Shown: piece after piece, positions 11,804 through 61,675 of the stretch | How positions within the stretch are numbered: the stretch's first letter is position 1 | How the letters are laid out: every line of letters starts with the position of its first letter | Assembly (NCBI GenBank): GCA_963924565.1 | Contig: OZ004607.1 | Location: 30,628,001-30,692,000 of the forward strand | DNA length: 64,000 nt | From: Ascidiella aspersa | Taxonomy: Eukaryota | Direction of reading: 5' to 3' | Translations under genes and position numbers: made by a program | The notes under the pieces: model-generated | What the model was told of the DNA's origin: nothing | Seen by the model: only the letters and a program-made list of their open reading frames with translations | Database searches by the model: none

Positions 11804-14800
11804 ATGCGTTGGACTGCTGTCGCTGTTTTACTGGGGATAGTTCGGATGGCCCCAGCTTTTGAAACGGCCAAGGAACTCAATGAATGGGTTCCGTATTACG
11901 GTATGTAGACAAATTGTTTTACGATCACGTTAGTTTCCAGTAAATAGAAATTGTGTATACCAGAAGTCACCAAACTAGGGTCCGCGGGCTGGATCGGTCC
12001 CTCAGATTTAATAAAACCTGTGTACGGCAAAATTTCTTGATAAAGAAGAAGTACAGTAATTGTACTCGGCTGTAATTGCAAATTAAATTTAGGTGAAATT
12101 GTAAACTGAGAAACAATTTATTAAAGCATACTACCATTTTTGTTGCATGTTTATTTGGGTTACCTTCGTTTTACGATATTCAAGTTAATTTTGTTAGACA
12201 TGCACAAAGTTTTATCCAGCCCGAGGCGATCAGGCTTTACAGCTATCCCACCTTTATGAAAAACGTTTGGTGACCCCTGGTGTACATCAATAATATTTGT
12301 ATTGCAATTTGAAACGTATATTTAATAAAGGCAATACGTCCTCTTAAAGGCCCGATTTACGTTACAGCTTCCGCAAGTGTAGGCAGTCGAGAACAGTCCG
12401 TAATTGAAAACATTTTTTCTTCGTTTAACTTAGTTTGTATTGAGTGAAAAACATTTAAAGTCAGCCTAAATAAATTAATCGCAAGACAAAGGCGAAATGT
12501 TTGTCGGTTGTACACCGTTATGCTAAACGCACTTTCCATATATAAGTGTAACTTAACATTCAAAAAAAATTGGACAGAGTTTTTTAGTTAAACTTTTAAG
12601 AGCATTTACTTTTTAGTTAGGCGCTGTTTGGGACTGCACTTCTTTCGTGCCTGGAGACACTTTTGAGGGAACCATACGACCATACTATGTGCTAATATGC
12701 GGATATACCAAACATTTTCTCGCTGCACCTGACTAAATTCTAATTTCAACACGAAACGTGCAACATAGCACTATACAGAGATTATAATTGTGCAACTAAG
12801 TGTCTAAGGTACTTAAAAAGGCGTCATTTTAAAAAATGATTAAGGCCTATACCAAAATATTGTAAAAAAAAACTTATTCCATTAGAAAAAAGGGTACCTG
12901 AGAAAGCCTTCGATAACCCTAACCACAGATTAAACGATTTTCGTTGTGTTAAACATAATGTCACGTTTCAGTTTTTAGTGCATCCCTCAACTGCAACCAT
13001 ATTGATCATTCGTATAATATCTTAATTGTTTTATGTAGATTGGTGCAACGCCGTTCGACTGGATCCTAGCCGGAATTCTATCAACTGCTTCTGTCCATCA
13101 AGAACTAAAGATTTGAACTTCTACTTTTCAACACTTAGCGGTCTAGAGAAGCCCACAGCGATTCCGAAAAGATGGCTTTGTGACGGACGGAATGATTGCC
13201 CTGACTATTCCGACGAGATAAGAGAAGACTGCCTCTGTTCTCCTCAAGAATATCAATGCGGGTGCTCACTTCGAACCCAGCACTGCTATCACGGCCAGGG
13301 GTGCTACAGCGAGGGTGACATTTGCAACGGTCGTTTGGATTGCATGGACGGCACAGACGAGCTAAACTGCACTTGTCCAAGTGGGACTTTTCGCTGTGCG
13401 TGCCAAGATAACAACACGTGCGCCTACCCGGAAATGTGCATCTTGGAGCATCAGACCTGAGACGGGAAAAGCGATTGTTCCGACGGAAGCGACGAAGCCG
13501 ACTGCCAATGTGCCGGGGAATTTTCTTGCGGTTGTCGCTACGTGAACGGTAAATGTCAAGATCCAACCAGCTGTATCCCGATGTCATCTAAATGCGACGG
13601 GACTAACGACTGTGTAGACGGCAGCGACGAACACGACTGCCAGTTTGCACAGCGTCAGTTCTACTGCGCATGCGCAAGAAAAGGATTATGCGTCTCACCC
13701 AATCCGTCCTACATTCCTTGGGAGTTTGTTTGCGACTTTGACAACGACTGCGGCGACTGGAGTGACGAAATTAACTGCCCGTGTACCGATGGGGAGTTTA
13801 TGTGCGATTGCAACAGACTGGGCTGCAGCACTTCGCCTGGCTGTGTCAACCTAAATTATTTCTGCGACGGAATAGACGACTGTGGCGATTGGAGTGATGA
13901 ACTTGACTGCATGTTTGACTATAAACGGTTTAATTGCGAGTGCTTTACAAACAACCAAACCTGCTCGGGCAACGTCGCAAGTGTTATCTTGGACAAAGTT
14001 TGCGATGGAATCTACCAATGCTCCGATCACTCCGACGAACGCTCCTGTAAATGCCAGGCGCCCAAGTTTCAATGCAAGTGCGCTAATGTTGCTTCCGATG
14101 CTTGTGCTGGAGATAATTGGTGCATCAGCAGCGATAAGGTATGCGATGGATACACTGACTGCTTGGACGGAAGCGACGAGTTGAACTGCACCTACCCCTA
14201 CTATGCTTTCACTTGCACTTGTGCTTTCGACCTTATATGCACAGAGAGGTTTGTGGCCGTAGGATACTGGCTTGAATGCAACGGTAATAACGAGTGTGGA
14301 GATTGGAGCGACGAAGATACGTGTTTATGCGGCGCTGGCAAGTTCATGTGCGACTGCTATAAAACATCACCAATCACATGCGACGTTAACAATGGATGCT
14401 TGGAACAGGAGAAAGTGTGCGATCACATAAACGACTGCGGGGATTGGAGCGACGAACGGAACTGCAACTTTTTCCAATGTGCTTGTAGTTCGTCAAACGT
14501 TTCAGCAGTTTGCTATGCCGAAAGCGTAAGCGGGGAGAGACGCTGTGACCTTGTGAACGACTGTGGCGATTGGAGCGACGAAAACAACTGCACTTGCCCA
14601 CCAAACAGCTTCGAGTGTCCGTGCAACTTTCCAGGATGTGGAGCCGGGCCCGGATGTGTATCAGCAAACTTTATGTGTGACGGGTTTAACGATTGTGGAG
14701 ATTGGAGTGACGAAGCGAATTGCTCGTGTCCCGCTGGAGAAACTCCTTGTGAGTGTTATGCTAGAGAAAATAAGACTTGCCATTTCAAGAACGGATGCCT

Positions 14801-17291
14801 TCAGCCTTGGCAAGTTTGCGACGGATTGAACGACTGTGGCGACTGGAGTGGAGAACTGGAATGCAATTGCACACACGGTCAAGTCAAATGCGGCTGCCTA
14901 TTCAACGACTCCGGTTGCGTTTCCAACAAGGGTTGTATTGATTGGTCTTTAGTGAATAATGGGATAGCCAACTGTTTCGGCGGTGACGACGAACCTTGTG
15001 TGACCAATTTTAACTTCTGTGATAACAATTGTCAGACAAAGGCCATGTACTGCCCTGATTTACAAGCAAAAGAAAAAATGTTGCAGTACGAAAATGCTTC
15101 GCTGACGCATTGCTTTCCTGTGTTGGCTAAAACGTTTATCAACAACACCATAGGAGAAAAAACACCAGAGTGGGCCTGCATTTCAACCACGTGTGGGGCA
15201 GAGAACGCTGGCTGCAAAAAACCGTTTGTTTCCGATAACAAGGAAGTTATAATAGCCAACCTGTTTTGTACTGGTAATAGCGAATGCAGCGACTGTAGTG
15301 ATGAGGCATTCAACCTTCCAGGATTTAAATGCGCCACCGGTTATTCGACGTTTACCTGCGTTCTTCCCCAAATAAATTTGTACGACGACATTGCACAGTG
15401 CTCCGACGGATCCGATTTGTGTTTCGCTGACGGGACGATGAACTGTTTTCAATGCTTTGATAAGCGACTTATAATCTCTCCCAAGCAGGTCTGCGACGGT
15501 GTTGTGGACTGTTACGATCTCTCAGACGAGTGCTTTTGCGCGAATCAAACTGCCTGCAACGATGTGCGCGGGATATCCAAGACCGTTTGCCCGCCCGGTG
15601 AACTATATTGCAACGAAACTGTTGGATGCGTGGAGGAAACCACTGTTCTGTGCAATTGGGATTACAAATGCACAAACAGCACGAACACAGTGGCCTGCAT
15701 CAATTCGGAAAGGCAGAAAACAATCAGTTGTGTCGCTATTTCAGGCCCAATTGAAGCTGTGCTGTGCGACGGCCGGCCGCAATGCAACGACTTGTCCGAC
15801 GAATGTGAAAACTGCCCGACTAAGCCTTGGTTTTGCGACGATGCCTGTCGCTTGTATTATCCCATTGGAGACCGATACTGCGACGGGCAAAATGATAGTG
15901 TTTCGGGTTATATTGACAAACCGTTTTGCCCCAATGGGTTCGACGAAAAAAACTGCTCCAAAAGGTTCTATTGCGCAAACGGTGTATCAGTCAGCATCGA
16001 TGTCAACAATGTATGTGATGGTATAATTAACTGTGAAAACGGAGAAGACGAGACTGAGGCACGTTGCGCTGATAGACGCTTTTACTGTGGCGATAAAAAG
16101 CCGATATCAGTGGCGAAAAGCCAGGTGGAGGATGGCAAGTGGGACTGCGCTGACGGAAGCGACGAATGCCCGCCGCAAACCGACAAAGTAACTGTGTTTT
16201 CCTCGCAATACGAGCTGATTGGTAACAAAATTATTCTTGCCGTATTTTGGATTATGGCGCTGTTATCAATTGCCGGTAATATCGTTGTGTTCGCCACCAC
16301 AGTAAAAAATATACTGGTTACCGACAAAATGTCAAAAGTGTTGCAATATAACTCGTTATTCGTACTCAACCTTTCCGTGTCCGATTTTTTAATGGGCATT
16401 TACCTTTTAACGATTTGCATTAAAACGGCCCAATTTTCTGGTTCGTATTGCTTCCATGACAAACCATGGCGTACGAGCAGATCGTGTTCGTTTTTAGGCG
16501 TCCTTGTCGTTCTTTCAACTGAAACATCCGTGTTCATAATGACATTTATGACCACATTCCGCCTTGTCACAATATTTCGACCTTTTATAACCTCCACGCT
16601 CAAAATAATCTGGGGAAGGTTGGCAGTGGCAGCGTCCTGGATTTTGGCAATTTTAATCGCCACTTTTCCTTTAATGTTTCCGACCTCTGGCTACTTTGTG
16701 TCCGGGGTTTGGTTTCCGAACTACTTTTACAAATCTGACCAAGTAGATAAGGCAGATGTGAACACCCTTGCATTAAGAATGGGACAAACAAACATTTCCT
16801 CATGGTCGAACACTTTGAAGTTCATTGAATCCAAGCTTCGATACTTGCCCATAAAAGGGGACATAGGTTACTACGGTGAGACGAGCGTGTGCATGCCTCG
16901 ACTTTTCGTAAACGTCGGTGACGCTGGTTGGGGTTTTTCCACTTTTCTTATCCTTCTTAATTTTCTTCTCTTTCTCTACATGGTCGTAAGCTACGTCGTC
17001 ATTTACCGCCTTAGCACCAGTGGAGCTGGAAAGTTTAGTAATAAGCGTTCGAAAAAGATGCAAAGCCGCATAACGCGCCTCATTCTAACCGATTTTGCTT
17101 GCTGGGTTCCGCTTTGCACACTGGCCTTTATACAACTTTCCGGTGTCGATTTACCCATCGTGGTGTACGCTATCAGCGCCGGAATTTTGCTTCCCATTAA
17201 CAGCGCAATCAACCCATTGCTGTATTCCGACGCCATAATTGGCGTGTTGTATTCTGTGTTTTCTTGTGGTAAACGTCAGTCCTCCCAATAG
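11804..17291 (+). pseudogene. LDLa-repeat GPCR (RXFP/GRL101-like, no LRRs) copy A; exons 11804-11900 and 13039-17291; in-frame TGA at 13458-13460
   Basis: Exon 1 encodes signal peptide MRWTAVAVLLGIVRMAPA...WVPYY (possible upstream ATG at 11792), followed by a phase-1 GT-AG intron. ORFs 13026-13460 and 13542-17291 share a frame and are separated by TGA where copies B and C have TGC (Cys). The tail is also shortened (TCG to TAG plus a deletion relative to B). Confidence 0.8.
11961..12279. mobile_element. hAT-type MITE in the intron of receptor copy A (same insertion as 30685-31006 in copy B)
   Basis: TIRs CAGAAGTCACCAAAC / GTTTGGTGACCCCTG; TSD GTGTATAC / GTGTACAT. Confidence 0.72.
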
Positions 17292-25484: not shown

Positions 25485-28400
25485 TTACATAGGGGTGGCA
25501 GCAATGCTTTTTGAATATGTGGTATTCGCGGTGCCGCCCCTGCTCGATGTCAAAGCGTCCGATTGGGAGGATTGACGTTTACCACAAGAAAACACGGAAC
25601 ACAACACGCCAACTATGGCATCGGAATACAGCAGGGGGTTAATCGCGCTGTTAGTTGGAAGCAAGATTCCGGCGCTGATAGCGTACACCACCATCGGCAA
25701 ATGGACACCGGAAAGTTGTATAAAGGCCAGTGTGCAAAGCGGAACCCAGCAAGCAAAATCAGTAAGAATAAGACGCGTTATGCGGCTTTGCATCTTTTTC
25801 GAACGCTTGCTACTGAACTTTCCAGCTCGTCTGGTGCTCAGGCGGTAAATGACCACGTAGCTTACGACCATGTAGAGAAAGAGAAGAAAATTAAGAAGGA
25901 TAAGGAAAGTGGAAAAACCCCAGCCAGCGTCACCGACGTTTACGAAAAGTCGAGGCATGCACACGCTCGTCTCACCGTAGTAACCTATCTCGCCTTTTAT
26001 GGGCAAGTACGGAAGCTTGGATTCAATAAAATCCAAAGTGTTCGACCATGAGGAAATGTTTGTTTGTCCCATCGTTAATGCAAGGGTGTTCACATCTGCC
26101 TTATCTACTTGGTCAGATTTGTAAAAGTAGTTCGGAAACCAAACCCCGGACACAAAGTAGCCAGAGGTCGGGAACATTAAAGGAAAAGTGGCGATTAAAA
26201 TTGCCAAAATCCAGGACGCTGCCACTGCCAACCTTCCCCAGATTATTTTGAGCGTGGAGGTTATAAAAGGTCGAAATATAGTGACAAGGCGAAATGTGGT
26301 CATAAATGTCATTATGAACACGGAGGTTTCAGTGGAAATAACGACAAGGACTCCCAAAAACGAACACGACCCGCTCGTACGCCATGGTTTGTCATGGAAG
26401 CAATACGAACCAGAAAATTGGGCCGTTTTAATGCAAATCGTTAAAAGGTAAATGCCCATTAAAAAATCGGACACGGAAAGGTTGAGTACGAATAACGAGT
26501 TATATTGCAACACTTTTGACATTTTGTCGGTAACCATTATATTCTTTGCTGTGGTGGCGAACACAACGATATTACCGGCAATTGATAACAGCGCCATAAT
26601 CCAAAATACGGCAAGAATAATTTTGTTACCAATCAGCTCGTATTGCGAGGAAAACACAGTTACTTTGTCGGTTTGCGGCGGGCATTCGTCGCTTCCGTCA
26701 GCGCAGTCCCACTTGCCATCCTCCACCTGGCTTTTCGCCACCGATATCGGTTTCTTATCGCGACAATAGAAGCGTTTATCAGCGCAACGTGCCTTAGTCT
26801 CGTCTTCTCCGTTTTCACAGTTAATTATACCATCACACACATTGTTGACGTCGATGCTGACTGATACACCGTTTGCGCAATAGAACCTTTTGGAGCAGTT
26901 TTTTTCGTCGAACCCAAGGGGGCAAAACGGTTTGTCAATGTAGCTCGAAGCGGTATCATTTTGCCCGTCGCAGTATCGGTCTCCGATGGGATAATACAAG
27001 CGACAGGGATCGTCGCAAAACCATGGTTTTGTCGGGCAGTTTTCACATTCGTCGGACAAGTCGTTGCATTGCGGCCGGCCGTCGCACAGCACAGCTTCAA
27101 TTGGGCCTGAAGCAGCGACACAACTGATTGTTTTCTGCCTTTCCGAGTTGATGCAGGCCACTGTGTTCGTGCTGTTTGTGCATTTGTAATCCCAATTGCA
27201 CAGAACAGTGGTTTCCGCCAGGCAACCGACAGTTTCGTTGCAATATAGTTCACCGGGCGGGCAAACGGTCTTCGATATCCCGCGCACATCGTTGCAGGCA
27301 GTTTGATTTGCGCAAAAGCACTCGTCTGAGAGATCGTTACAGTCCACAACACCGTCACAGACCTGCTTGGGAGAGATTATAAGTCGCTTATCAAAGCACT
27401 GAAAACAGTTCATCGTCCCGTTAGCGAAACACAAATCGGATCCGTCGGAGCACTGTGCAATGTCGTCATACAAATTTATTTGGGGAAGAATGCAGGTAAA
27501 CGTCGAATAACCGGTGGCGCATTTAAATCCTGGAAGGTTGTATCGCTCATCGCTTGAGTCGCTGCATTCGTTATTGCCGTCACAAAATAGATTGGCTATT
27601 ATAACTTCCTTATTGTCGCAAACAAAAGGTTCTCTGCAGCCAGGGTGCCCTGCCCCACACGTGGTTGAAATACAGGCCCACTCTGGTATTTTTTCTCCTA
27701 TTGTGTTGTTGATAAAAGTTTTACTCAACACCGGAAAGCAGTGCGTCAGCGAAGCATTTTCGTACTGCAACATTTTTTCTTTGGCTTGTAAATCGGGGCA
27801 GTACATGGCCTTTGTTTGGCAATTGTTATCGCAGAAGTTAAAATTGGTCACACAGGGTTCGTCGTCACCGCCGAAACAGTTCGCTTTCCCATTATTCACT
27901 AAAGATCTATCGATACAACCCTTGTTGGAAACGCAACTCGAGTCGTTGAATATGCAGCCGCATATGACTTGCCCGCTTGTGCAATTGCATTCTAGTTCTC
28001 CACTCCAGTCGCCACAGTCGTTCAATCCGTCGCAAACTTGCCAAGGCTGAAGGCATCCGTTTTTGAAATGGCAAGTCTTGTTTTCTCTAGCATAACACGC
28101 GCAAGGAGTCTTTTGAGCGGGACACGAGCAATTTGCTTCGTCGCTCCAATCTCCACAATTGTTAATCCCGTTGCATACGCGGTTTTCTGATACACATCCT
28201 GGTCCGGCTCCACAGCCTTGATAGTTGCAAGAACACTCGAAGCTTTTCGGCGGGCAGGTGCAGTTGTTTTCGTCGCTCCAATCGCCACAGTCGTTCACAA
28301 GGTCACAGCGTCTCTCCCCGCTTACGCTTTCGGCATAGCAAACTGCTGAAACGTTTGACGAACTACAGGCACATTGGAAAAAGTTGCAGTTCTGTTCGTC

Positions 28401-31157
28401 GCTCCAATCCCCGCAGTCGTTTAAGTGATCGCACACTCTCTTCTGTTCCAAGCATCCGATGTTAACGTCGCATGTGATTGGTGATGTTTTATAGCAGTCG
28501 CACATGAACTTGCCAGCGCCGCATGAACACGTGTCTTCGTCGCTCCAATCGCCACACTCGTTCTTACCGTTGCATTCAAGTCGGTAGCCTACGGCCAGAT
28601 ACCTCCCTGTGCAGGAATCGTTGGAAGCGCAAGTGCAAGTGAAGAGATCACTGGAGGGGTAGGTGCAGTTCAACTCGTCGCTTCCGTCCAAGCAGTCAGT
28701 GTATCCATCGCATACCTTATCGCTGCTGATGCACCAATTATCTCCAGCACAAGCATCGGAAGCAACATTAGCACACTTGCATTGAAACTTGGGCGCCTGG
28801 CATTTACAGGAGCGTTCGTCGGAGTGATCCGAGCATTGGTAGGTTCCGTCGCAAACTTTGTCCAATGTTACACTTGCGACGTTGCCCGAGCAGGTTTGGT
28901 TGTTGGTAAAGCACTCGCAATTAAACCGTTTATAGTCAAACGTGCAGCCAAGTTCGTCACTCCAATCGCCACAGTCGTCTATTCCGTCGCAGACATATTT
29001 CTTTCGGTTGACACATCCAGGTGAAGTGTTGCAGCCAAGTCTGTTGCAATTGCACACAAACTCTCCCTTGGCACACGGGCAGTTAATTTCGTCACTCCAG
29101 TCGCCGCAGTCGTTGTTAAGATCGCAAACAAACTCCCAAGAAATGTACGAGGGATTGGGTGAGACGCATGATCCATTACTTGCGCATGCGCAGTAGAACT
29201 GGGGCTTAGCAAACTGGCAGTCGTGTTCGTCACTTCCGTCAGGGCAGTGGTTAATTCCATCGCATTTTAACATTAACGGAATACAGCTGGTTGGTTCTTG
29301 ACATTTGCCGTTTACGTAGCGACAACCGCAAGAAAATTGCCCGGCACATTGGCAGTCGGCTTCGTCGCTTCCGTCGGAACAATCGCTTTTCCCGTCGCAG
29401 GTCTGATGCTCCAAGATGCACACTTCCGGGTAGGCGCACGTGTTGTTATCTTGGCACGTACAGCGGTAAGTCCCACTCGGACAAGTGCAGTTGAGCTCGT
29501 CTGTGCCGTCCATGCAATCCAAACGACCGTTGCAAATGTCACCCTCGTTATAGCACCCCTGCCCATGATAACAGTGCTGGGTTCGAAGTGGGCATCCGCA
29601 TTGATATTCTTGAGGAGAACAGAGGCAGTCTTTCTCGTCGGCTTTGTCAGGGCAGTCATTTGCGCCGTCACAAAGCCATCTTTTTGGAATCGCTGTTGGC
29701 TTGTTTCGACCGCTAAGTGTTGAAAAGTAGTACTTCAAATCTTTGGTTCTTGATGGACAGAAGCAGTTGATAGAATTCCGGCTAGGATCCAGGCGAACGG
29801 TGTTGCACCAATCTAAATACAGAACCAACTTCAGATGTTAAACGTATAAACAATATGGTTTTAGTTGAGGTACCCTTTTCCTTTTCGTTTATTTTGTATA
29901 AAATGTTAACTTGTTTTTACGATGTTTTGGTGTACTGTAGACCTTAATATTGTAGACCTTTAAAAATATGTTTGCATTATTTATGTCATTTACGAAGATC
30001 TTACGAATAATCGGTAAATATTCTATTTTTTTAACCTGGGCAACGTCGGGTATTTCGTCTAGTCATCTATAAAGACAAGGTCTTTTTGAAATACCTTAGT
30101 CACTTAGTTTCACACCTAATATTTTCGGTATCGTTAAGCTATGTTGCACGTTTCGTGTTGAAGTAAATATTTGTTTAGGCGCAGCAAAATATTGTTTGGT
30201 ATATTCGCATATTAGCAAGTAATACTGTCCTCGGTACCCATAAAAATGTCTCTAGGTCCGAAAGCAGTGCAGTCCCAAACAGCGCAAACTAAAAATCTAA
30301 CGCTGTTAGCAGTTTAACTAACAAAGTCTGTCAAGTTATTTTCCGAAGGTAAAGTTATGCTAATAATATTTATATATTATGGAAAGTGCGTTTAGCAAAA
30401 CGCTGTAAGCCTGACAAACATTCGCATTCGCATAGGTAAATGATGCCGATACCTATATTAGCCGTATTGTGTTTAATTTATTTAGGCTGGCCGATGGTTT
30501 GAATGTTTTTCGCTCAACACAAACCAAGTTGAACGAAGAAAACCTATTTTTAATTAACGTACTGTTCTCAAATGCCTATACCTGTGGAAGCTGTAACATA
30601 AATCGGGCACATTAAAGTGAACATATTGCCTTTGATGGTTATCCGTTTCAAATCGCAATACAAATATTAATTATTGTTGTACACCAGTGGTCACCCAGTT
30701 TTTTCCTGAACTAAAGGATCGGATACCTGGAAGCCTGATCACCTCGGGCCGGATAAAAGTTTGTGTCAAACTTTATTGACTTGTTGATCGCTCAACGAAG
30801 CTAATATAAAAAAAGATGGAACCGTAACTGTAAAAAGTGTAAAGCGCCTTAATCGTCCAGTTTACAAAGTCACCACAATGTGGTTTGGAATTGCATCAAA
30901 GAACGTTTTAACTGTAGTTCATCTATTTTAAGAAAATATGCCGCACGCCGGTTTTATTAACCCTGGGGCCCGATCCAGCCCGCGGACTCTAGTTTGGTGA
31001 CTCCTGCTGTACACAATTACTATTTAGTGCAAACTAACGTGATCGTAAAACAATTTGTCTACATACCGTAATACGGAACCCATTCTTTGAGTTGCAAGGA
31101 CCCAGATGGGGCCATCCAAACTATTCCCAGTAAAACAGTAACAGCCGTCCAACGCAT
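25485..31157 (-). CDS. LDLa-repeat GPCR (RXFP/GRL101-like, no LRRs) copy B, intact ~1472 aa; exons 31157-31067 and 29812-25485
   Basis: Signal peptide MRWTAVTVLLGIVWMAPSGS; ~22 CxxxxDCxDxSDE-type LDLa modules; LGR-type 7TM motifs GN (TM1), NLSVSDFLMGIYLL (TM2), WRTSxxC, YYGETSVCMP, DFACWVP and NSAINPLLY; uninterrupted 4.3-kb exon. Confidence 0.92.
30685..31006. mobile_element. hAT-type MITE in the intron of receptor copy B
   Basis: TIRs CAGTGGTCACC / GGTGACTCCTG; TSD TTGTACAC / CTGTACAC; same position as the MITE in copy A. Confidence 0.72.
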
Positions 31158-43700: not shown

Positions 43701-46700
43701 ATGCAGTTAATTATTTTGTGTTTTCTGCTCTTAGCACAGTTTGCTGTGGCGACAACCAGGACGGATGGCAATCCACTTCGCGAGTGGCATTCTTACTACG
43801 GTGATTTGGTTTCACTCGATGCAATCATATTATTATTTAGTCTCAGAATTTTAAACGAAACTCGATTACTGTCGTAAATTCAACCGGTTAATTTTAAATA
43901 CGACCGTTTTTACAAAGGATGAGACGAGTGTTGGAAGACGGGTATAACGCCGGTTTAATTTTTGGAAATAAAACATCTAAAAATAAAAACTTTCTGGGTT
44001 TTGATGTAAATATTTAACATTTTGTTTTTCGACAGAATTGGTGACGTTTTTTATAAAATGCCTTGACATGCAAAAAAAATTTATGCGTTTTGATGGTAGG
44101 AAGTATTTATTAAAATGAATTAATTTTTTCCTCTGCTGGTCCTTTTGCGGTTAAAGGTAAAATAAGTTATTGGTTGATGCGACCCTTCAACAATAAAATA
44201 ACAGTATCAAAATAATGCAACGGCTCTAACAATATGTCGTTTGATTGCAGACTGGTGCACTGAAATGAGATTACATCCAGATCGCAACGTTTCCAACTGT
44301 TACTGTCCAGCGAAAACCAAAGATCTTTCCTACCACTTTTTTACTATACGAAAGGCCGACGCTCAACAAACCATTCAAAAGAGATGGATGTGCGACGCTA
44401 AACACGATTGTAATGATGGGTCGGATGAAAAAGACTGTCTATGCTCACCTGACCAATATCAATGCGATGCCCACTGAGAACCCAGCACTGCTATCACGGA
44501 CAGGGGTGCTACAGTGAGGGTGACATTTGCAACGGTCGTTTGGATTGCATGGACGGCACAGACGAGCTAAACTGCACTTGCCCAAGTAAAACTTTTCGCT
44601 GTGCGTGCCAAGATAACAACACGTGCGCCTACCCGGAAGTGTGCATCTTGGAGCATCAGACCTGCGACGGGAAAAGCGATTGTTCCGACGGAAGCGACGA
44701 AGCCGACTGTCAATGTGCCGGGGAATTTTCTTGCGGTTGTCGCTACGTGAACGGTAAATGTCAAGATCCAACTAGTTGCATCCCGTTGTCATTTGAATGC
44801 GATGGGATTAACGACTGCGCAGACGGCAGCGATGAATTAGATTGTGAATTAGTCATGATTCAGTTTTACTGCGCGTGTGTAAGGAGAGGAACGTGCGCTC
44901 AGCCTTTCCCTAATTCGGTGCCGTGGAAAGACGTGTGCAACTTTCGCGACGACTGTGGCGACTGGAGCGACGAAGTAAATTGTCCGTGCGCCCTAGGCGA
45001 ATTCAAGTGCGACTGCAACGCGAAAGGCTGCGGCGTTTCGGCGGGCTGCGTCAACCAGAGGAGACAGGTGTGCAACGGTTTCGATGACTGCGGCGACTGG
45101 AGCGATGAAACCGACTGTGCGTTCAAGAAGCAGCGCTTCACTTGCGACTGCTTCGCGCAGAACCGCAGCTGCGCCTATGGAGTGGCGAGTGTGCGGCAAG
45201 ATCAGGTGTGCGACGGCACCTTTCAGTGCTCGGACCACTCGGACGAGCGCAACTGCACTTGCAATGCATCCAAGTTCAGGTGCAAGTGCGCTGATGCCGG
45301 GGTAGGGCAGTGCGAAGGCAAGCGATGGTGCGTTCCCCGCGATGCGGTGTGCGACGGCAGGAACGACTGTGGCGACTGGAGCGACGAAGAAGGCTGCGGC
45401 AGCTGCGGAGCGAATTCCTTCCGCTGCGACTGCTACAAAACTTCCCCAATTAAATGCTCGCGCAACTACGGCTGCTTCAGGCCCAGCCAACGCTGCGACC
45501 ATTTCGAAGACTGCGGCGACGGGAGCGACGAACGCGGCTGCGACTTTTTGCCTTGCGCGTGTCGCTCGTCGTCCTCGCAGACGCCGTGCTACACCTGGAG
45601 CGTGGCGACCGGCAAACGCTGCGACCTTGTGAACGACTGCGGCGATTGGAGCGACGAGAACAACTGCACCTGCCCGCGCTTCAGCTTTGAGTACCCGTGC
45701 AACTTTCCAGGATGTGAAACTGGACCTGGGTGTGTTTCGGTTATCAAGCATTGCGACGGTTATAACGACTGCGGCGATTGGGCCGACGAGGCCGGGTGTG
45801 TTTGCGCGGTTGGCACGAAACCGTGCAAATGCTACGTGGAGGCGAAAAAAACCTGCGCAGACAAGCAGAGCTGTGTCGCCGACAGTAAGGTATGCGACGG
45901 CAAAAACGACTGCGGCGATTGGAGCGACGAACTGGGCTGCCAGTGCGGCGCCGGTCAGGTAAGGTGCGGGTGCATTTTTGCCGACACCAACTGCACCTCT
46001 AACAAGAGGTGCATAGACGTGTCAATGGTCAATGACGGGACGCCTGACTGCGAAAAAGGCGAGGACGAACCGTGCACGATGAGTTGGCACTTCTGCGATG
46101 GGCGCTGCAAGACCACCGCTATGTACTGTGCCGACTCTGACGCCAAGGCGAGAATGCTGCAGTATGAAAACGCCTCGCAGACGCACTGTTTTCCCATGAT
46201 GACCAAAACTTTTATAAACGACACCATAGGGAAAAAAGAACCGGAGTGGGCTTGCGTTTCAAGCGCGTGCCGCTCACAAAATCACCTTGGCTGTATAACA
46301 CCAGTCCGCTGTGATAATAACAAAGTTATAATAGCGAACGCTTTCTGCGATGGAATTGACCACTGTTTTGACAGCAGTGATGAATGGTATAACGACGTTG
46401 GGTTTAAATGCTCCACCAGGCATTCGTCTTTCAGCTGTGTTCTCCCTCAGTCAAACCTATACGACGACGTGGCGCAGTGTTCGGACGGCGCCGATTTGTG
46501 TTTCGTCAACGGGACCATGAACTGTTTTCAATGCTTCGACAAACGCCTGGTGATCTCGAGCGCACAAGTGTGCGACGGCGTGGTGGATTGCCTAGACCTC
46601 TCCGACGAGTGTTTCTGCTCGGATCACACGGTTTGTGACGAGGTTCTTGGCGATTCCCGGTCTCTCTGCGATCCCGGGCAAGTTTACTGCAACGACGACT

Positions 46701-48451
46701 TGGGATGTGTGGAACAGTCGGTGGCGGTTTGCAACGCTAACTACAAATGTACCAACCAGGCCAACACGGCGTGGTGCACGCCCGGCCAAAATATTAACAA
46801 GAAGGTAAGTTGCGTTAATTTTGGTGGTCGGATAGAGGCTACGATGTGCGACGGGCGACCGGAGTGCAGTGACTTATCCGACGAATGTGGAAATTGCACC
46901 TACAAGCCGTGGTTTTGCGACGACCCTTGTCGCCTGTATTATGCGATAGGTGGTCGATACTGCGACGGTCAGAACGACATGGCCTACCGTTTCATCAACA
47001 ACCCATCGTGTCCCGAGGGCTTCGACGAGAAAAACTGTTCCCAGCGATTTTATTGCAGTAGTGGTATTTCCATAAGTATTGACGTCAACAATGTATGTGA
47101 TGGTACAATTAACTGTGAAAACGGGGAAGATGAGACTAAGGCTCGTTGCGCTGATAAACGCTTTTACTGTGGCGATAAAAAGCCGATATCAGTGGCGAAA
47201 AGCCAGGTGGAGGATGGCAAGTGGGACTGCGCTGACGGAAGCGACGAATGCCCGCCGCAAACTGACAAAGTAACTGTGTTTTCCTCGCAATACGAGCTGA
47301 TCGGCAACAAAATTATTCTTGCCGTGTTTTGGATTATGGCGCTTGTTTCCATTGCTGGCAACCTCGTTGTGTTTATAAGGACAGCGAAGGACATTTTGTC
47401 GCCAGAACGACAGTCCATACAGTTTCGCTATAACTCGTTGTTCGTGCTAAACCTTTCGGCATCCGACTTCTTAATGGGCGTTTACCTTTTAGCGGTTTGC
47501 ATTAAGGCCGCGCAGTTTTCTGGTTCGTATTGTTTCCACGATCACCTTTGGCGCACAAGTCGAGCGTGCTCTGTTTTGGGCGTCGTTGTCGTTCTTTCCA
47601 CCGAGACTTCCGTGTTCATTATGACATGCATGACCGCATTTCGCCTTGTGACCATATTGCGACCATTCGTAACCGCCACCGTTTCGATAACCTGGGGAAA
47701 GTTGGCGGTGGCAGCGTCCTGGATTTTGGCAATTTTAATCGCCACTTTTCCGTTAATGTTCCCGACCTCTGGCTACTTTGTATCCGGGGTTTGGTTTCCG
47801 AACTACTTTTACAAATCTGACCAAGTAAGTAAAGCTGACCTTAATACACTCGCTTTTAGAATGGGTCAAACGAACTCCTCTTCATGGTCCGATACCAAGG
47901 AGTATGTTCAAAGAAAACTCCCGTATTTGCCGATTAAGGGCGACATTGGTTACTACAGCGAAACCAGCGTGTGCATGCCTCGCATCTTCGTGAACGTCGG
48001 CCAAGCTGGCTGGGGCTACTCGACTTTTCTAGTCACCATAAATTTGTTTCTATTTAGTATCATGGTATTGGGCTACGGCCTGATTTATCGGCAAGGGACG
48101 AGAAACACAGAGAAGACGAGCAAGCGCACTAAGAAAATCCAACGCAAAATAACGCGCCTTATTCTGACTGATTTCGCTTGCTGGGTTCCGCTTTGTACAC
48201 TAGCTTTTATACAGCTTTCCGGTGTGGAATTTCCAGTTGTTGTGTACGCCATCAGCGCTGGAATCTTGCTTCCCACCAACAGCGCCCTTAACCCCTTGAT
48301 ATATTCCGACACAATCAGTGAGATCCTGGAAAGGCTGCACTTTTGCCATAAGCGCCAAACCGCTGTTAAACTAATAAATCCGCCTGCAGTGATTTCCGGC
48401 TCTCCCAACAACTCAGGTTCTTCTGGATCGCATCAAACCACGCCCATTTAA
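43701..48451 (+). pseudogene. LDLa-repeat GPCR (RXFP/GRL101-like, no LRRs) copy C; exons 43701-43800 and 44251-48451; 1-bp deletion at ~44466
   Basis: Exon 1 encodes signal peptide MQLIILCFLLLAQFAVATT...WHSYY with the same phase-1 intron. CAATGCGATGCCCA here versus CAATGCGGATGCCCA in copy B gives a frameshift. The remainder (ORF 44462-48451) is open through the 7TM domain. It could be an intact gene with an assembly error. Confidence 0.75.
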
Positions 48452-49125
48452 AATCGAAAAACAATCCAGCGGATTCGAACCAGTGTTTGTTTGAAGTGAG
48501 TTTATTTGTTTCGCGGTCCCCTGTTTCCCAGAACAACGTTTTTTCCGTGTTGCTGACCTTTTGATTCTATAGAATGTTCTTTCATTTTGTTTTCCTCCAA
48601 ATGATAATCTCCTACTCCATGTTAAACACTGGAAGGCTGCGTTTCTTTCGAGTTTCTTGGCAAAAATGAATTTGTTTAATTTGTATACAGTTCAACTATA
48701 ACCCTATTATTTTTGTCTACCATTTTAAAAATGTAACATACTGCTTTATAGGCGTAGATCATATACCTTGTGTTGCAGTGAACTTTTTTCTTTGCAAACG
48801 ATTGCGGAGTTCGTCTGTTTACCATCAACGTTTATTACGTTTAAAGCGTGCCTGTTAAATTATATCTATATGTGCAATTATCTGTCTTTTATTATAACTT
48901 ACACGAGAACAAACAAAGTATTCTTAATACCAGTAACAACACCCTAGCTTGGTATAGGCTACGTATGGTTGGCACACTTTTACAAAAGTAAAAAAAAATT
49001 ACACAAATTGGAAGAAAACATCCTGAAAAGCAAACATGAACGAACGTAAACTTTGTCATTGGAAAACCTGAGCGTTCCAGCACACGCACTTGAGTTAAAT
49101 ACTCGTCACAAAATACAGTAAACTC

Positions 49126-60196: not shown

Positions 60197-61675
60197 TCAC
60201 TCGGTCGAGAGAGAAAGAGAGGCTGATTTGGCTTCCCTGTAGATCTTTAGCGGGTGAAGCAGCGTCAGCACGGAGAGTCCAATCATCGCATAATTGGTAA
60301 AAACGAAGCCGGGGTCCGCATGCGTCGCCACCTTAAAGACGGCGTACTGGAGGGCGCCCACCGCTCCCACGCAGGTCTGCGTCAGACCGAAAAGCTGGCC
60401 GAAGTGGCGCGCAGGGAAGGCCAGGGCCACGAAGGCCGCGTTGCCGCCGTAGAGGAACGAGCGGAAGATGAGCAGGAAGGCGAAGGCGGCGTTGACTCGG
60501 CGAAAGGCAACACACACCGACAGAGCGATTGAAAGAAGGCTGGTGGCGGTCATCGAAGCACAGAAGCCGAGGAGCTTCGATCTCTCGCCGTCGGCCACTG
60601 CGTTTCTCTTGCAGTACTTTCTCACGGCGTCTGTCAGCAGTCCGTTGATTGGGGCCACGGCGGCGCCGCCAAGCATCACCAGTCCGAAAACGTCCATGTG
60701 GCGACTAACGTCATGCGCCCCCTCGAACGCCTGTAGCCAGTTGAGGAGGCTCCCGATGAAAAAGGACATTCGCAGGTTGCCCAGGCTCATAAAGAAAACG
60801 TTGCTCCAAAACAACGGACGTTTGAGGTATTTCCCTAAATTGCCATCAACATCTTCTCCGCTACTTTCGGTTACAGGTTGAGAAGCTGTCGGTTTGTCGT
60901 CTTTATTTGAATCTCTGTGCGGTGAAGCCGTACTGGGACGACGGAACAGGGTAAAAGTCTGCTGTTCTCTTTTCAAAGTGAGCTCAAAGATTCCGTATCG
61001 GTAGTCAGGTCGCGGCGGTATCAAGCCGATGGGCATGACCAAAAAGGTCCTGAGCCACGGAAAAAGAGTAAAACCGGCCATGGCGTAGAACAAATGCCGC
61101 AGCTCGAATCCGCTATCGAAGAGAACCTTTATCAGCAGGTAAGTTACGATGCCCGAATCGAACATACCGTTCAGCAGGGCGATGTAGACGGTGCGACATC
61201 GCGGAAAGAGGTTCCCGACTTGGATGTTGCTGGTGAGTAGCGCGAATCCGGCAACGGCGATAAATATCATTGCCGGGAAAAGGAGCCACGCGGTCCTGTA
61301 TGTCATCAAAGCTAGGAGTAGGCAGGCGGTAGAGTAGAACGCCGTAGCAATGCATCGCAGTGTCCAGGTGCCGTACACGTCCAGCAAGTAACCGCAGGGG
61401 AAGCAGAGTAGGTTCAGTATAGACGTCGCCAGCGTGAATATCAAGTTAAAGGCCTCGTCCCGCTGGTGACAAATCCGCGATATATTCTCGTCGTAGCTGC
61501 GGTTTAAGGTCCGCTGTACGCTTTTATTTCGCGCTTCTGTAAAGTTGCACAGCTCCGAAAAGACGCCATTTTTTGTCAGGCAGTACTGCAAAGACGGCCA
61601 GCCGAAAATCGCCCCCGCCAGTAACAGACTCTCGAGTAGGGCGGTCAGGACGCTGGACAGGTGTTGGCATTTCAT
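60197..61675 (-). CDS. SLC43 family transporter (LAT3/LAT4/SLC43A3-like MFS), single coding exon, 492 aa
   Basis: N-terminal LLESLLLAGAIFGWPSL...GVFSELC and QRDEAFNLIFTLA, GYLLDVYG, NIQVGNLFP, LNGMFDS, FRSFLY and FPARHFGQLFGL match SLC43 motifs; ~12 hydrophobic segments; GC-rich coding bias. Confidence 0.88.
   Translation of the reverse strand: MKCQHLSSVLTALLESLLLAGAIFGWPSLQYCLTKNGVFSELCNFTEARNKSVQRTLNRSYDENISRICHQRDEAFNLIFTLATSILNLLCFPCGYLLDVYGTWTLRCIATAFYSTACLLLALMTYRTAWLLFPAMIFIAVAGFALLTSNIQVGNLFPRCRTVYIALLNGMFDSGIVTYLLIKVLFDSGFELRHLFYAMAGFTLFPWLRTFLVMPIGLIPPRPDYRYGIFELTLKREQQTFTLFRRPSTASPHRDSNKDDKPTASQPVTESSGEDVDGNLGKYLKRPLFWSNVFFMSLGNLRMSFFIGSLLNWLQAFEGAHDVSRHMDVFGLVMLGGAAVAPINGLLTDAVRKYCKRNAVADGERSKLLGFCASMTATSLLSIALSVCVAFRRVNAAFAFLLIFRSFLYGGNAAFVALAFPARHFGQLFGLTQTCVGAVGALQYAVFKVATHADPGFVFTNYAMIGLSVLTLLHPLKIYREAKSASLSLSTE

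What the first reader, a model, noticed from the sequence alone, without database searches (positions are those of the whole stretch)
44470..48290. Receptor C is a mosaic: sharp near-identical tracts inside a divergent paralog
Seen: C is strongly diverged from A/B over most of its length but near-identical in DNA at ~44475-44785 (modules 2-4), ~47080-47340 (last modules, hinge, start of TM1) and ~47690-47830 (TM4/ECL2), and largely so at ~48150-48290 (TM6-7). In the first tract C shares A-specific residues (YSEG, FRCAC, GEFSC, QDPT) against B; in the second it mixes A-like (CGDKK) and B-like (TKARCADK) states. Inference: recurrent segmental gene conversion shuffling modules among paralogs, a diversification mode known from immune and recognition receptor families.
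Basis: partly seen in the sequence, partly recalled or inferred. Interest (0 to 1): 0.78.

Follow-up and report, generated by a model that had tools for sequence, protein, structure and literature searches.

The report
Gene-conversion patches in a sea-squirt receptor
One old, diverged copy of a sea-squirt cell-surface receptor gene carries three short stretches overwritten from (or shared with) neighbouring copies, a clear but ordinary example of gene conversion between duplicated genes.

Summary
Receptor C (main exon about 44251-48451, +) is 71% identical in DNA to paralogs A and B, and synonymous sites are saturated (pS 0.7-1.0). Three sharply bounded stretches are 94-98% identical with pS 0-0.25: T1 44455-44790, T2 47081-47343 and T3 47708-47827. 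Each beat all 1000 column shuffles. Four-fold sites are identical at 75 of 86 inside the tracts against 92 of 241 outside. The fourth stretch (48150-48290) is ordinary conserved TM6-7.

Short-read contigs and reads from three other data sets carry the same junctions, so this is not an assembly chimera. They also restore a base missing after 44465, which closes C's apparent frameshift.

T1 is a cassette shared with six further paralogs, closest to the neighbouring gene D. T2 and T3 are shared with A and B only. All tracts are about as old as the A/B duplication. The "A-like/B-like mix" reflects private changes in A and B, not two donors.

The best explanation is interlocus gene conversion seeded in the most conserved protein segments. 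It homogenises those segments; it does not shuffle modules. Nothing suggests somatic or programmed diversification. The family is the tunicate LDLa-repeat GPCR group already described in Ciona. This is a known process in a new gene family.

The parts
44251..48451 (+). Receptor C, main coding exon. It encodes an LDLa-repeat ectodomain followed by a rhodopsin-type 7TM domain. The frame is open from a likely splice acceptor (…CAG ending at 44250) to the stop.
   Evidence: ORF 44462-48451. The upstream module is open in another frame. Pfam finds Ldl_recept_a (4.7e-59) and 7tm_1 (1.8e-13).
44465..44466 (+). One base is missing in the assembly relative to A and B. This shifts the frame between module 1 and the rest of C.
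   Evidence: Alignment. Contigs of X1 (depth 64.2 of 64.2) and X2 (100.9 of 100.9) both carry an extra G behind 44465. X7 has depth 1 there and is uninformative.
44455..44790 (+). Tract T1, covering LDLa modules 2-4. The cassette is 89-94% identical (whole-tract values) in A, B, D and six further loci.
   Evidence: pS is 0.12-0.37 among the nine full-length genes and 0.57-0.78 to the C9 group.
45350..45358 (+). Site where reference C lacks one LDLa module relative to A and B. Reads of X7 run on into an extra module here.
   Evidence: Alignment gap. X7 has 5 loose-end reads before 45350 and 5 behind 45358.
45623..45677 (+). Marginal short patch of high identity to A and B.
   Evidence: 2 mismatches in 55 against B. 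The score was reached in 5 of 1000 shuffles for B-C and 78 of 1000 for A-C.
47081..47343 (+). Tract T2, covering the last LDLa module(s), the hinge and the first half of TM1. It is shared with A and B only, and its right border is very sharp.
47708..47827 (+). Tract T3, covering TM4 and the start of extracellular loop 2. It is shared with A and B only.
48150..48290 (+). It is conserved coding sequence, not a conversion tract.
13039..17291 (+). Receptor A. Its tract counterparts are 13249-13595 (T1), 16008-16261 (T2) and 16610-16753 (T3). It has an in-frame TGA at 13458-13460.
25485..29812 (-). Receptor B, an intact frame. Its tract counterparts are 29275-29608 (T1), 26590-26843 (T2) and 26098-26241 (T3).

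Best explanation
C is an old, fast-diverging paralog in a local cluster of LDLa-repeat, relaxin-receptor-like GPCR genes: A, B and C in the window, and D about 17 kb downstream of C. Three short segments of C (about 340, 263 and 120 bp) were homogenised with neighbouring paralogs by non-allelic (interlocus) gene conversion in the germline. In this process a break in one copy is repaired from a paralog, leaving a short patch of copied sequence.

The patches sit where the proteins are most conserved: N-terminal modules 2-4, the membrane-proximal module with hinge and TM1, and TM4 with ECL2. The inferred reason is that only there was DNA similarity high enough to pair.

T1 is a cassette that also occurs in D and its relatives. 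T2 and T3 involve only A, B and C. All three date to about the time of the A/B duplication.

What is shown: the tracts, their low synonymous divergence, their borders, and their presence in other read sets. What is inferred: the repair mechanism, the seeding in conserved islands, and the timing. What is not resolved: the direction of transfer.
For: - Sliding identity and pS drop sharply inside the tracts.
- All three tracts beat 1000 of 1000 shuffles.
- Four-fold sites are identical at 75 of 86 in the tracts against 92 of 241 outside, p 6e-16.
- C's terminal branch is 0.40 and 0.35 in the backbone trees, against 0.024, 0.033 and 0 in T1, T2 and T3.
- In the same tracts, pS to the C9-group paralogs stays at 0.57-0.78, even though the T3 protein is nearly identical across groups. 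Synonymous sites are therefore free to vary there.
- Whole-genome DNA search finds T2 and T3 at 94-96% only in A and B, with the next best at or below 78% (T2) or 81-83% over comparable length (T3). T1 is found at 89-94% in nine other loci.
- Contigs of X1 and X2 cross the borders of T2 and T3 and the right border of T1 with 31 or more letters on each side. They carry C's private variants inside the tracts. X7 reads cover all 30 bins.
- Other families in this genome show similar conversion islands, according to earlier scan notes that I did not check.
Against: - No long reads were available. The left border of T1 is crossed by only 29 letters of the X1 and X2 contigs.
- X1 and X2 may come from the individual that was assembled, although they differ from the window at many sites.
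- The shuffle test ignores rate differences along the gene. The synonymous-site tests cover that gap.
- Pairing between copies that are only about 65% identical in the flanks is hard for classical conversion, so a template-switching repair event is a live alternative.
- For T1 the evidence is a branch-length collapse, not a clean topology conflict. The AU test against monophyly of the D clade gives only p 0.033.
Confidence: 0.85

Rival explanations
1. One complex replication-based rearrangement (template switching), linked to the event that made the inverted A/B duplication, wrote all the patches at once. On this view there were no separate recombinational conversions.
For: All tracts have similar pS (0.07-0.25), equal to the A-B backbone pS of 0.09-0.19. 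The three-way site patterns are star-like: in T2, 7, 3 and 8 private sites for B, A and C. A and B are inverted relative to each other. The flanks are too diverged (about 65%) for easy heteroduplex formation.
Against: T1 has a different set of partners (D and its clade) from T2 and T3. A matches D better than B at 13545-13605, which suggests tract ends differ between copies. No junction scars or inserted bases are seen at the borders.
Confidence: 0.1
2. The tracts are conserved by selection alone. The constraint could act on the protein, on codon usage, or on an embedded RNA or DNA element, with no exchange between copies.
For: The tracts coincide with the most conserved protein segments of the subfamily.
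Against: In the same segments pS to the C9-group paralogs is 0.57-0.78, despite near-identical protein in T3. Backbone stretches with equally low pN (0.07-0.11) keep pS at 0.5-0.9. No Rfam family matches 44200-48500. The right border of T2 falls in the middle of TM1.
Confidence: 0.03
3. Assembly or polishing artefact: reads from A or B were used to correct C's consensus in places.
For: The assembly does carry at least one local error or variant in C, the missing base after 44465.
Against: Independent short-read contigs from two samples, plus raw Illumina reads from a third data set, carry C's backbone joined to the tracts, including C-private variants inside T1 and T2. Each tract has 2-11 C-private sites. 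Simple overwriting by A or B reads would not leave such sites.
Confidence: 0.03

Closest known systems
Interlocus gene conversion in clustered receptor gene families (for example mouse V1R, PMC2644715, and mosaicism in human rhodopsin-type GPCRs, PMC2684142). For both papers I saw only the search listing and the start of the abstract.
   Same: Short, sharply bounded patches of near-identity, silent sites included, between otherwise diverged paralogous GPCR genes in clusters.
   Different: The family here is a tunicate LDLa-repeat receptor. The backbone is saturated at silent sites, so the contrast is extreme. One cassette (T1) is shared with a second clade of the family.
Ciona LDLRR-GPCR cluster (Kamesh et al. 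2008, PMC2396169; passages read)
   Same: Tandem LDLa modules with no leucine-rich repeats, followed by a 7TM domain similar to the INSL3/relaxin receptors. The family is a tunicate lineage-specific expansion. The best database hits are Ciona, Phallusia, Clavelina and Styela proteins.
   Different: That paper reports 14 confirmed members with up to 10 modules and does not mention gene conversion in the passages I read.
Relaxin receptor RXFP1 / LGR type C (PDB 7tmw)
   Same: It is the closest solved 7TM domain (E 6.2e-25). It has an LDLa module in the ectodomain.
   Different: RXFP1 has one LDLa module plus leucine-rich repeats. Receptor C matches Ldl_recept_a many times and no LRR family at E up to 0.001. 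The ligand and the activation mode of the tunicate receptors are unknown.
Conversion islands in other gene families of this same genome (scan notes s1-788658 and s1-788676)
   Same: Patches confined to the most conserved coding segments, with silent sites included.
   Different: They involve different gene families (dehydrogenases, P-glycoproteins). Those notes are unchecked by me.
Programmed gene conversion that diversifies immune or surface receptors (chicken immunoglobulin pseudo-V donors, trypanosome VSG). These examples are recalled, not taken from a call.
   Same: Segmental copying between related sequences produces mosaic receptor genes.
   Different: Those systems act somatically or in a programmed way on the variable, ligand-facing parts, using silent donor arrays. 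Here the patches are germline, the same in three other data sets, cover conserved parts, and make the copies more alike.

Membership tests
Interlocus (non-allelic) gene conversion tract | A bounded segment far more similar between paralogs than its flanks, beyond chance. | tested here: met
   T1, T2 and T3 were reached in 0 of 1000 shuffles. The fourth stretch failed the test.
Interlocus (non-allelic) gene conversion tract | Synonymous sites are homogenised too, while remaining free to vary in other paralogs. | tested here: met
   pS is 0.07-0.25 in the tracts against 0.56-0.83 in the backbone. pS to the C9 group within the tracts is 0.57-0.78.
Interlocus (non-allelic) gene conversion tract | The tract's tree or branch lengths disagree with those of the flanks. 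| tested here: met
   C's terminal branch is 0.35-0.40 in the backbone and 0-0.033 in the tracts. For T1 the signal is mainly in branch lengths (AU p 0.033).
Interlocus (non-allelic) gene conversion tract | The mosaic is real in the organism and not an assembly product. | tested here: met
   X1 and X2 contigs and X7 reads carry the junctions. Only short reads were used, and T1's left border is crossed by 29 letters.
Interlocus (non-allelic) gene conversion tract | Non-reciprocal transfer with an identifiable donor and recipient. | not testable with these tools
   No outgroup species is available. D is the closest T1 partner (pS 0.12-0.19), but the direction is unresolved.
Tunicate LDLRR-GPCR (LDLa-only, relaxin-receptor-like rhodopsin GPCR) | Tandem LDLa modules at the N-terminus with no leucine-rich repeats. 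| tested here: met
   Only Ldl_recept_a and 7tm_1 match C (plus PRKCSH-like below its cut-off for B). No LRR family matches at E up to 0.001.
Tunicate LDLRR-GPCR (LDLa-only, relaxin-receptor-like rhodopsin GPCR) | The 7TM domain is closest to relaxin/INSL3 and glycoprotein-hormone receptors. | tested here: met
   RXFP1 at 6.2e-25, then LHCGR, TSHR and FSHR.
Tunicate LDLRR-GPCR (LDLa-only, relaxin-receptor-like rhodopsin GPCR) | The nearest relatives are tunicate proteins of the same architecture. | tested here: met
   Among the 68 hits at E up to 1e-20 (of 4278 candidates), the top named hits are Ciona, Phallusia, Clavelina and Styela proteins at 37-50% identity, with PF00057 + PF00001.
Programmed or somatic diversification by gene conversion | Tracts differ between cells or individuals and fall in the variable, ligand-binding parts. 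| tested here: not met
   The junctions are the same in X1, X2 and X7. The tracts lie in the most conserved segments. Tissue-level variation was not tested.

The most novel reading that the evidence does not exclude
T2 (membrane-proximal LDLa module, hinge, start of TM1) and T3 (TM4 and the start of ECL2) were kept together because they form one co-adapted activation unit. This would resemble the LDLa/hinge and ECL2 interplay that I recall for RXFP1. On this reading, conversion moves a shared 'signalling core' between paralogs while the ligand-facing modules diverge freely. Together with the module-number variant seen in X7, it would make this very large orphan family a rapidly evolving recognition or chemosensory repertoire with constant and variable parts.
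Probability: 0.12. Interest if true: 0.55.

Novelty: new member of a known kind. Interest (0 to 1): 0.33.

Why it matters
The result gives a clean, well-controlled example of patchy gene conversion in a large, orphan, tunicate-specific receptor family. It marks which parts of these receptors are kept alike between old paralogs: N-terminal modules 2-4, the hinge with TM1, and TM4 with ECL2. Those parts are a reasonable starting point for chimera experiments on how LDLa-only GPCRs signal.

It also carries a practical warning. Trees of this family built from whole genes or from conserved blocks will be distorted by such patches.

It does not reveal a new mechanism.

Tried and rejected
1. I first read the T1 tree as a topology conflict with the backbone. 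That was wrong. The C9 group is a clade in both trees, so the split I named is present in both. The real signal is the collapse of the distances between A/B/C and the D clade, plus a weak AU result (p 0.033).

2. Inter-chromosomal concerted evolution of T1 is not needed. Within the L035 clade (on C3, C6 and C7), T1 pS is 0.07-0.31 against 0.02-0.33 in the backbone, so that clade is simply young. Only the exchange with the C1 cluster needs explaining.

3. I tested whether C's ectodomain and 7TM have different deep origins. The result is unresolved: AU p 0.087 and 0.046.

4. I looked for a closer relative of C's backbone that could show the unconverted state. None exists in this genome. The best ectodomain matches are 55% (C9 group) and 61% (A and B, partial).

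5. Rfam search of 44200-48500 gave 0 matches.

6. Expression could not be judged. X8 RNA gave 2 reads (one pair) at 47511-47824, partly on T3, and they could come from A or B.

7. Literature. 'LDLRR-GPCR' occurs in 1 paper. Searches combining LDLa, GPCR, expansion and gene conversion, tunicate, gene conversion, receptor, paralogs and LDL, and ascidian, LDL receptor class A, GPCR and allorecognition listed no paper on conversion in this family. Supplements were closed.

Full report
**What is in the window.** The window holds three long single-exon reading frames of one family. A lies at 13542-17291 (+) and continues upstream to about 13039 through an in-frame TGA at 13458-13460. B lies at 25485-29828 (-). 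C lies at 44462-48451 (+). Pfam finds many LDL-receptor class A modules followed by a rhodopsin-type 7TM domain, and no leucine-rich repeats. The closest solved 7TM is the relaxin receptor RXFP1, followed by the glycoprotein-hormone receptors.

**The family.** The best database relatives are uncharacterised proteins of Ciona, Phallusia, Clavelina and Styela with the same architecture, at 37-50% identity. These came from 68 hits at E up to 1e-20 among 4278 candidates. This is the 'LDLRR-GPCR' cluster described for Ciona by Kamesh et al. 2008 (PMC2396169, passages read). The host is therefore a tunicate, and an earlier scan note calls it a sea squirt. The family is very large here: 93 scored matches of 382 candidates for C's 7TM part, all without stops in the match.

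**The observation.** A three-way DNA alignment shows C at about 71% identity to A and B: 1168 and 1197 mismatches in 4088 columns. Three stretches stand out.
- T1: 44478-44772, 9 mismatches in 295 against A; the wider extent is 44455-44790.
- T2: 47081/47084-47343, 10 in 260 against A and 15 in 263 against B.
- T3: 47708-47827, 3 in 120 against A and 2 in 120 against B.

None of 1000 column shuffles reached any of these scores. That shuffle ignores differences in constraint along the gene, so I also looked at silent sites.

**Silent sites.**
- Nei-Gojobori pS between C and A/B is 0.7-1.0 over most of the gene and 0-0.2 in 25-codon windows inside the tracts.
- Four-fold sites are identical for A-C at 75 of 86 in the tracts against 92 of 241 outside (p 6e-16). 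For B-C the figures are 68 of 85 against 92 of 241.
- Backbone windows with equally conserved protein (pN 0.07-0.11) keep pS at 0.5-0.9.

**The fourth stretch.** It has 26 variable sites in 141, and its longest exact run of 20 was reached in 744-792 of 1000 shuffles. Four-fold identity is 14 of 25. A 55-nt patch at 45623-45677 is marginal.

**Position in the protein.** By hydropathy, T2 ends in the middle of TM1. T3 covers TM4 and the first 23 or so residues of a long ECL2.

**Is it an assembly artefact?** One read-laying run on 43900-48600 used raw Illumina DNA reads (X7), RNA reads (X8), and Logan contigs from two further samples (X1, X2). All three DNA sets differ from the window at many sites, and X7 covers all 30 bins.

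| Border | Contig evidence |
|---|---|
| T1 right | X1 44756-45344; X2 44735-45227 |
| T2 left | X1 45952-47170 |
| T2 right | X1 47272-47505; X2 47296-47739 |
| T3 left | X2 47296-47739 |
| T3 right | X2 47791-48199 |
| T1 left | Entered by only 29 letters (to 44483) in both X1 and X2 |

The differences listed for these contigs all lie outside the tracts, so the contigs carry C's private variants inside T1 and T2. Summed contig depth rises about nine-fold in T1 and two- to three-fold in T2 and T3. This fits the copy numbers found by DNA search, although it is a rough measure. No long reads were available.

**The apparent frameshift.** X1 and X2 both carry an extra G behind 44465. This removes the one-base frameshift that separates C's first module from the rest in the assembly. 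C is therefore probably intact.

**Who shares the tracts.** Whole-genome DNA searches gave the following.
- T2: found at 96% and 94% only in A and B, with the next best at 78%.
- T3: found at 95% and 94% only in B and A. The next best over comparable length is 81-83%.
- T1: found at 89-94% in nine other loci on contigs C1, C3, C6 and C7, and at 75-76% in four more.

I fetched eleven loci and aligned ten full-length paralogs with A, B and C. The only high-identity segment between A/B/C and the clade of D (L036, starting about 17 kb downstream of C, beyond the window) and L035-L040 is T1. Its ends vary between 44455-44597 on the left and 44741-44792 on the right.

**pS matrices settle the reading of T1.** In T1, pS is 0.12-0.37 among A, B, C, D and the L035 clade, but 0.57-0.78 to the C9-group paralogs. 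The protein is well conserved in all of them. Silent sites are therefore free there, and nucleotide-level constraint is excluded. Rfam also finds nothing.

Within the L035 clade, T1 distances match the clade's own backbone distances. The spread of T1 over four chromosomes is thus explained by a young clade plus an exchange inside the C1 cluster. D is the closest partner (pS 0.12-0.19).

**Trees.** C's terminal branch is 0.40 and 0.35 in the backbone trees. It is 0.024, 0.033 and 0 in T1, T2 and T3.

I withdrew my first claim of a topology conflict for T1, because the C9 group is a clade in both trees. What remains is the branch-length collapse and a weak AU rejection of D-clade monophyly in T1 (p 0.033).

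**Timing and the A-like/B-like mix.** Tract pS between C and A/B is 0.07-0.32 (0.07-0.25 in T2 and T3), close to the A-B backbone pS of 0.09-0.19. The three-way site patterns are star-like. T2 has 7 B-private, 3 A-private and 8 C-private sites. T1 has 17, 5 and 11. T3 has 0, 1 and 2.

In T2, the B-like state is also the C9-group state, and A's version is private to A. So one shared sequence diverged three ways at about the time of the A/B duplication. Two donors are not needed. 'Recurrent' conversion is not shown, and a single burst or one complex event fits as well. The direction of transfer is unresolved.

**Mechanism.** The best explanation is germline interlocus gene conversion, seeded where protein conservation had kept enough DNA similarity. 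It leaves patches of 120-340 bp, which from my own knowledge is a typical tract size.

The patches lie at collinear positions and make the copies more alike. The long middle of the ectodomain (44830-47050) has no tract and no close relative anywhere in the genome: the best matches are 55-61% protein identity. This is homogenisation of conserved parts. It is not module shuffling and not a diversification device. The same junctions in three other data sets argue against somatic variation at this level.

Because the flanks are only about 65% identical, a template-switching repair event tied to the inverted A/B duplication is a reasonable variant (confidence 0.1).

**Comparison and novelty.** Patchy conversion among clustered GPCR genes is well known. 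Examples are V1R (PMC2644715) and human GPCR mosaicism (PMC2684142); for both I saw only the listing and the start of the abstract. Earlier notes of this scan report similar islands in other families of this same genome, judged there as a known process (I did not check them).

I found no paper on conversion in the LDLRR-GPCR family. The supplements of the Ciona paper were closed. The finding is a new member of a known kind.

The boldest reading still open is that T2 and T3 travel together because hinge/TM1 and TM4/ECL2 form one co-adapted activation unit. I could not test this.

Noticed in passing
window 13458-13460: Receptor A has an in-frame TGA where B and C have a cysteine codon, inside its T1 counterpart. 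The other 1249 codons downstream are open. It could be a young pseudogene, a polymorphism or an assembly error.
   Followed up: no
window 44465-44466: The assembly lacks one base here relative to A and B, which splits C's frame. Contigs of X1 and X2 both carry an extra G that restores the frame.
   Followed up: yes
window 45350-45358: Reference C lacks one LDLa module that A and B have. The junction lies in a short motif repeated in neighbouring modules. Five X7 reads on each side run on into an extra module with a typical acidic LDLa motif, which suggests a module-number polymorphism or a collapsed module in the assembly.
   Followed up: partly
window 47343: Seven X7 reads match C's T2 up to 47343 and then continue in a sequence that resembles A and B but is not identical to either (about 5 differences in 30, by eye). 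This points to a further A/B-like copy or allele in that individual.
   Followed up: no
whole genome G000: At least 93 loci encode this 7TM type (93 scored of 382 candidates), many in dense clusters on C2, C5, C6 and C8. Ciona has 14 confirmed LDLRR-GPCRs according to the 2008 paper.
   Followed up: partly
L036 1195-6915 (G000:C1:30693195-30698915, just beyond the window's end): Paralog D has a 1907-aa open frame and is the closest partner of the T1 cassette. Its ectodomain is far from the L035 clade (pS 0.60), but its 7TM is close (pS 0.24-0.28). It may itself be a mosaic, or its extra modules may be misaligned.
   Followed up: partly
L038, L039, L040: Three paralogs of the L035 clade have their frame split in two (933+511, 919+482 and 944+486 aa) at about the same place before the last modules. 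They could be broken copies or carry a gained intron.
   Followed up: no
window 13545-13605: Here A is closer to D (0.85-0.88) than to B (0.70-0.78). The 3' end of the T1 cassette therefore differs between A and B.
   Followed up: partly
window 60197-61675 (-): A 492-aa open frame with many hydrophobic stretches lies between C and D. I did not examine it.
   Followed up: no
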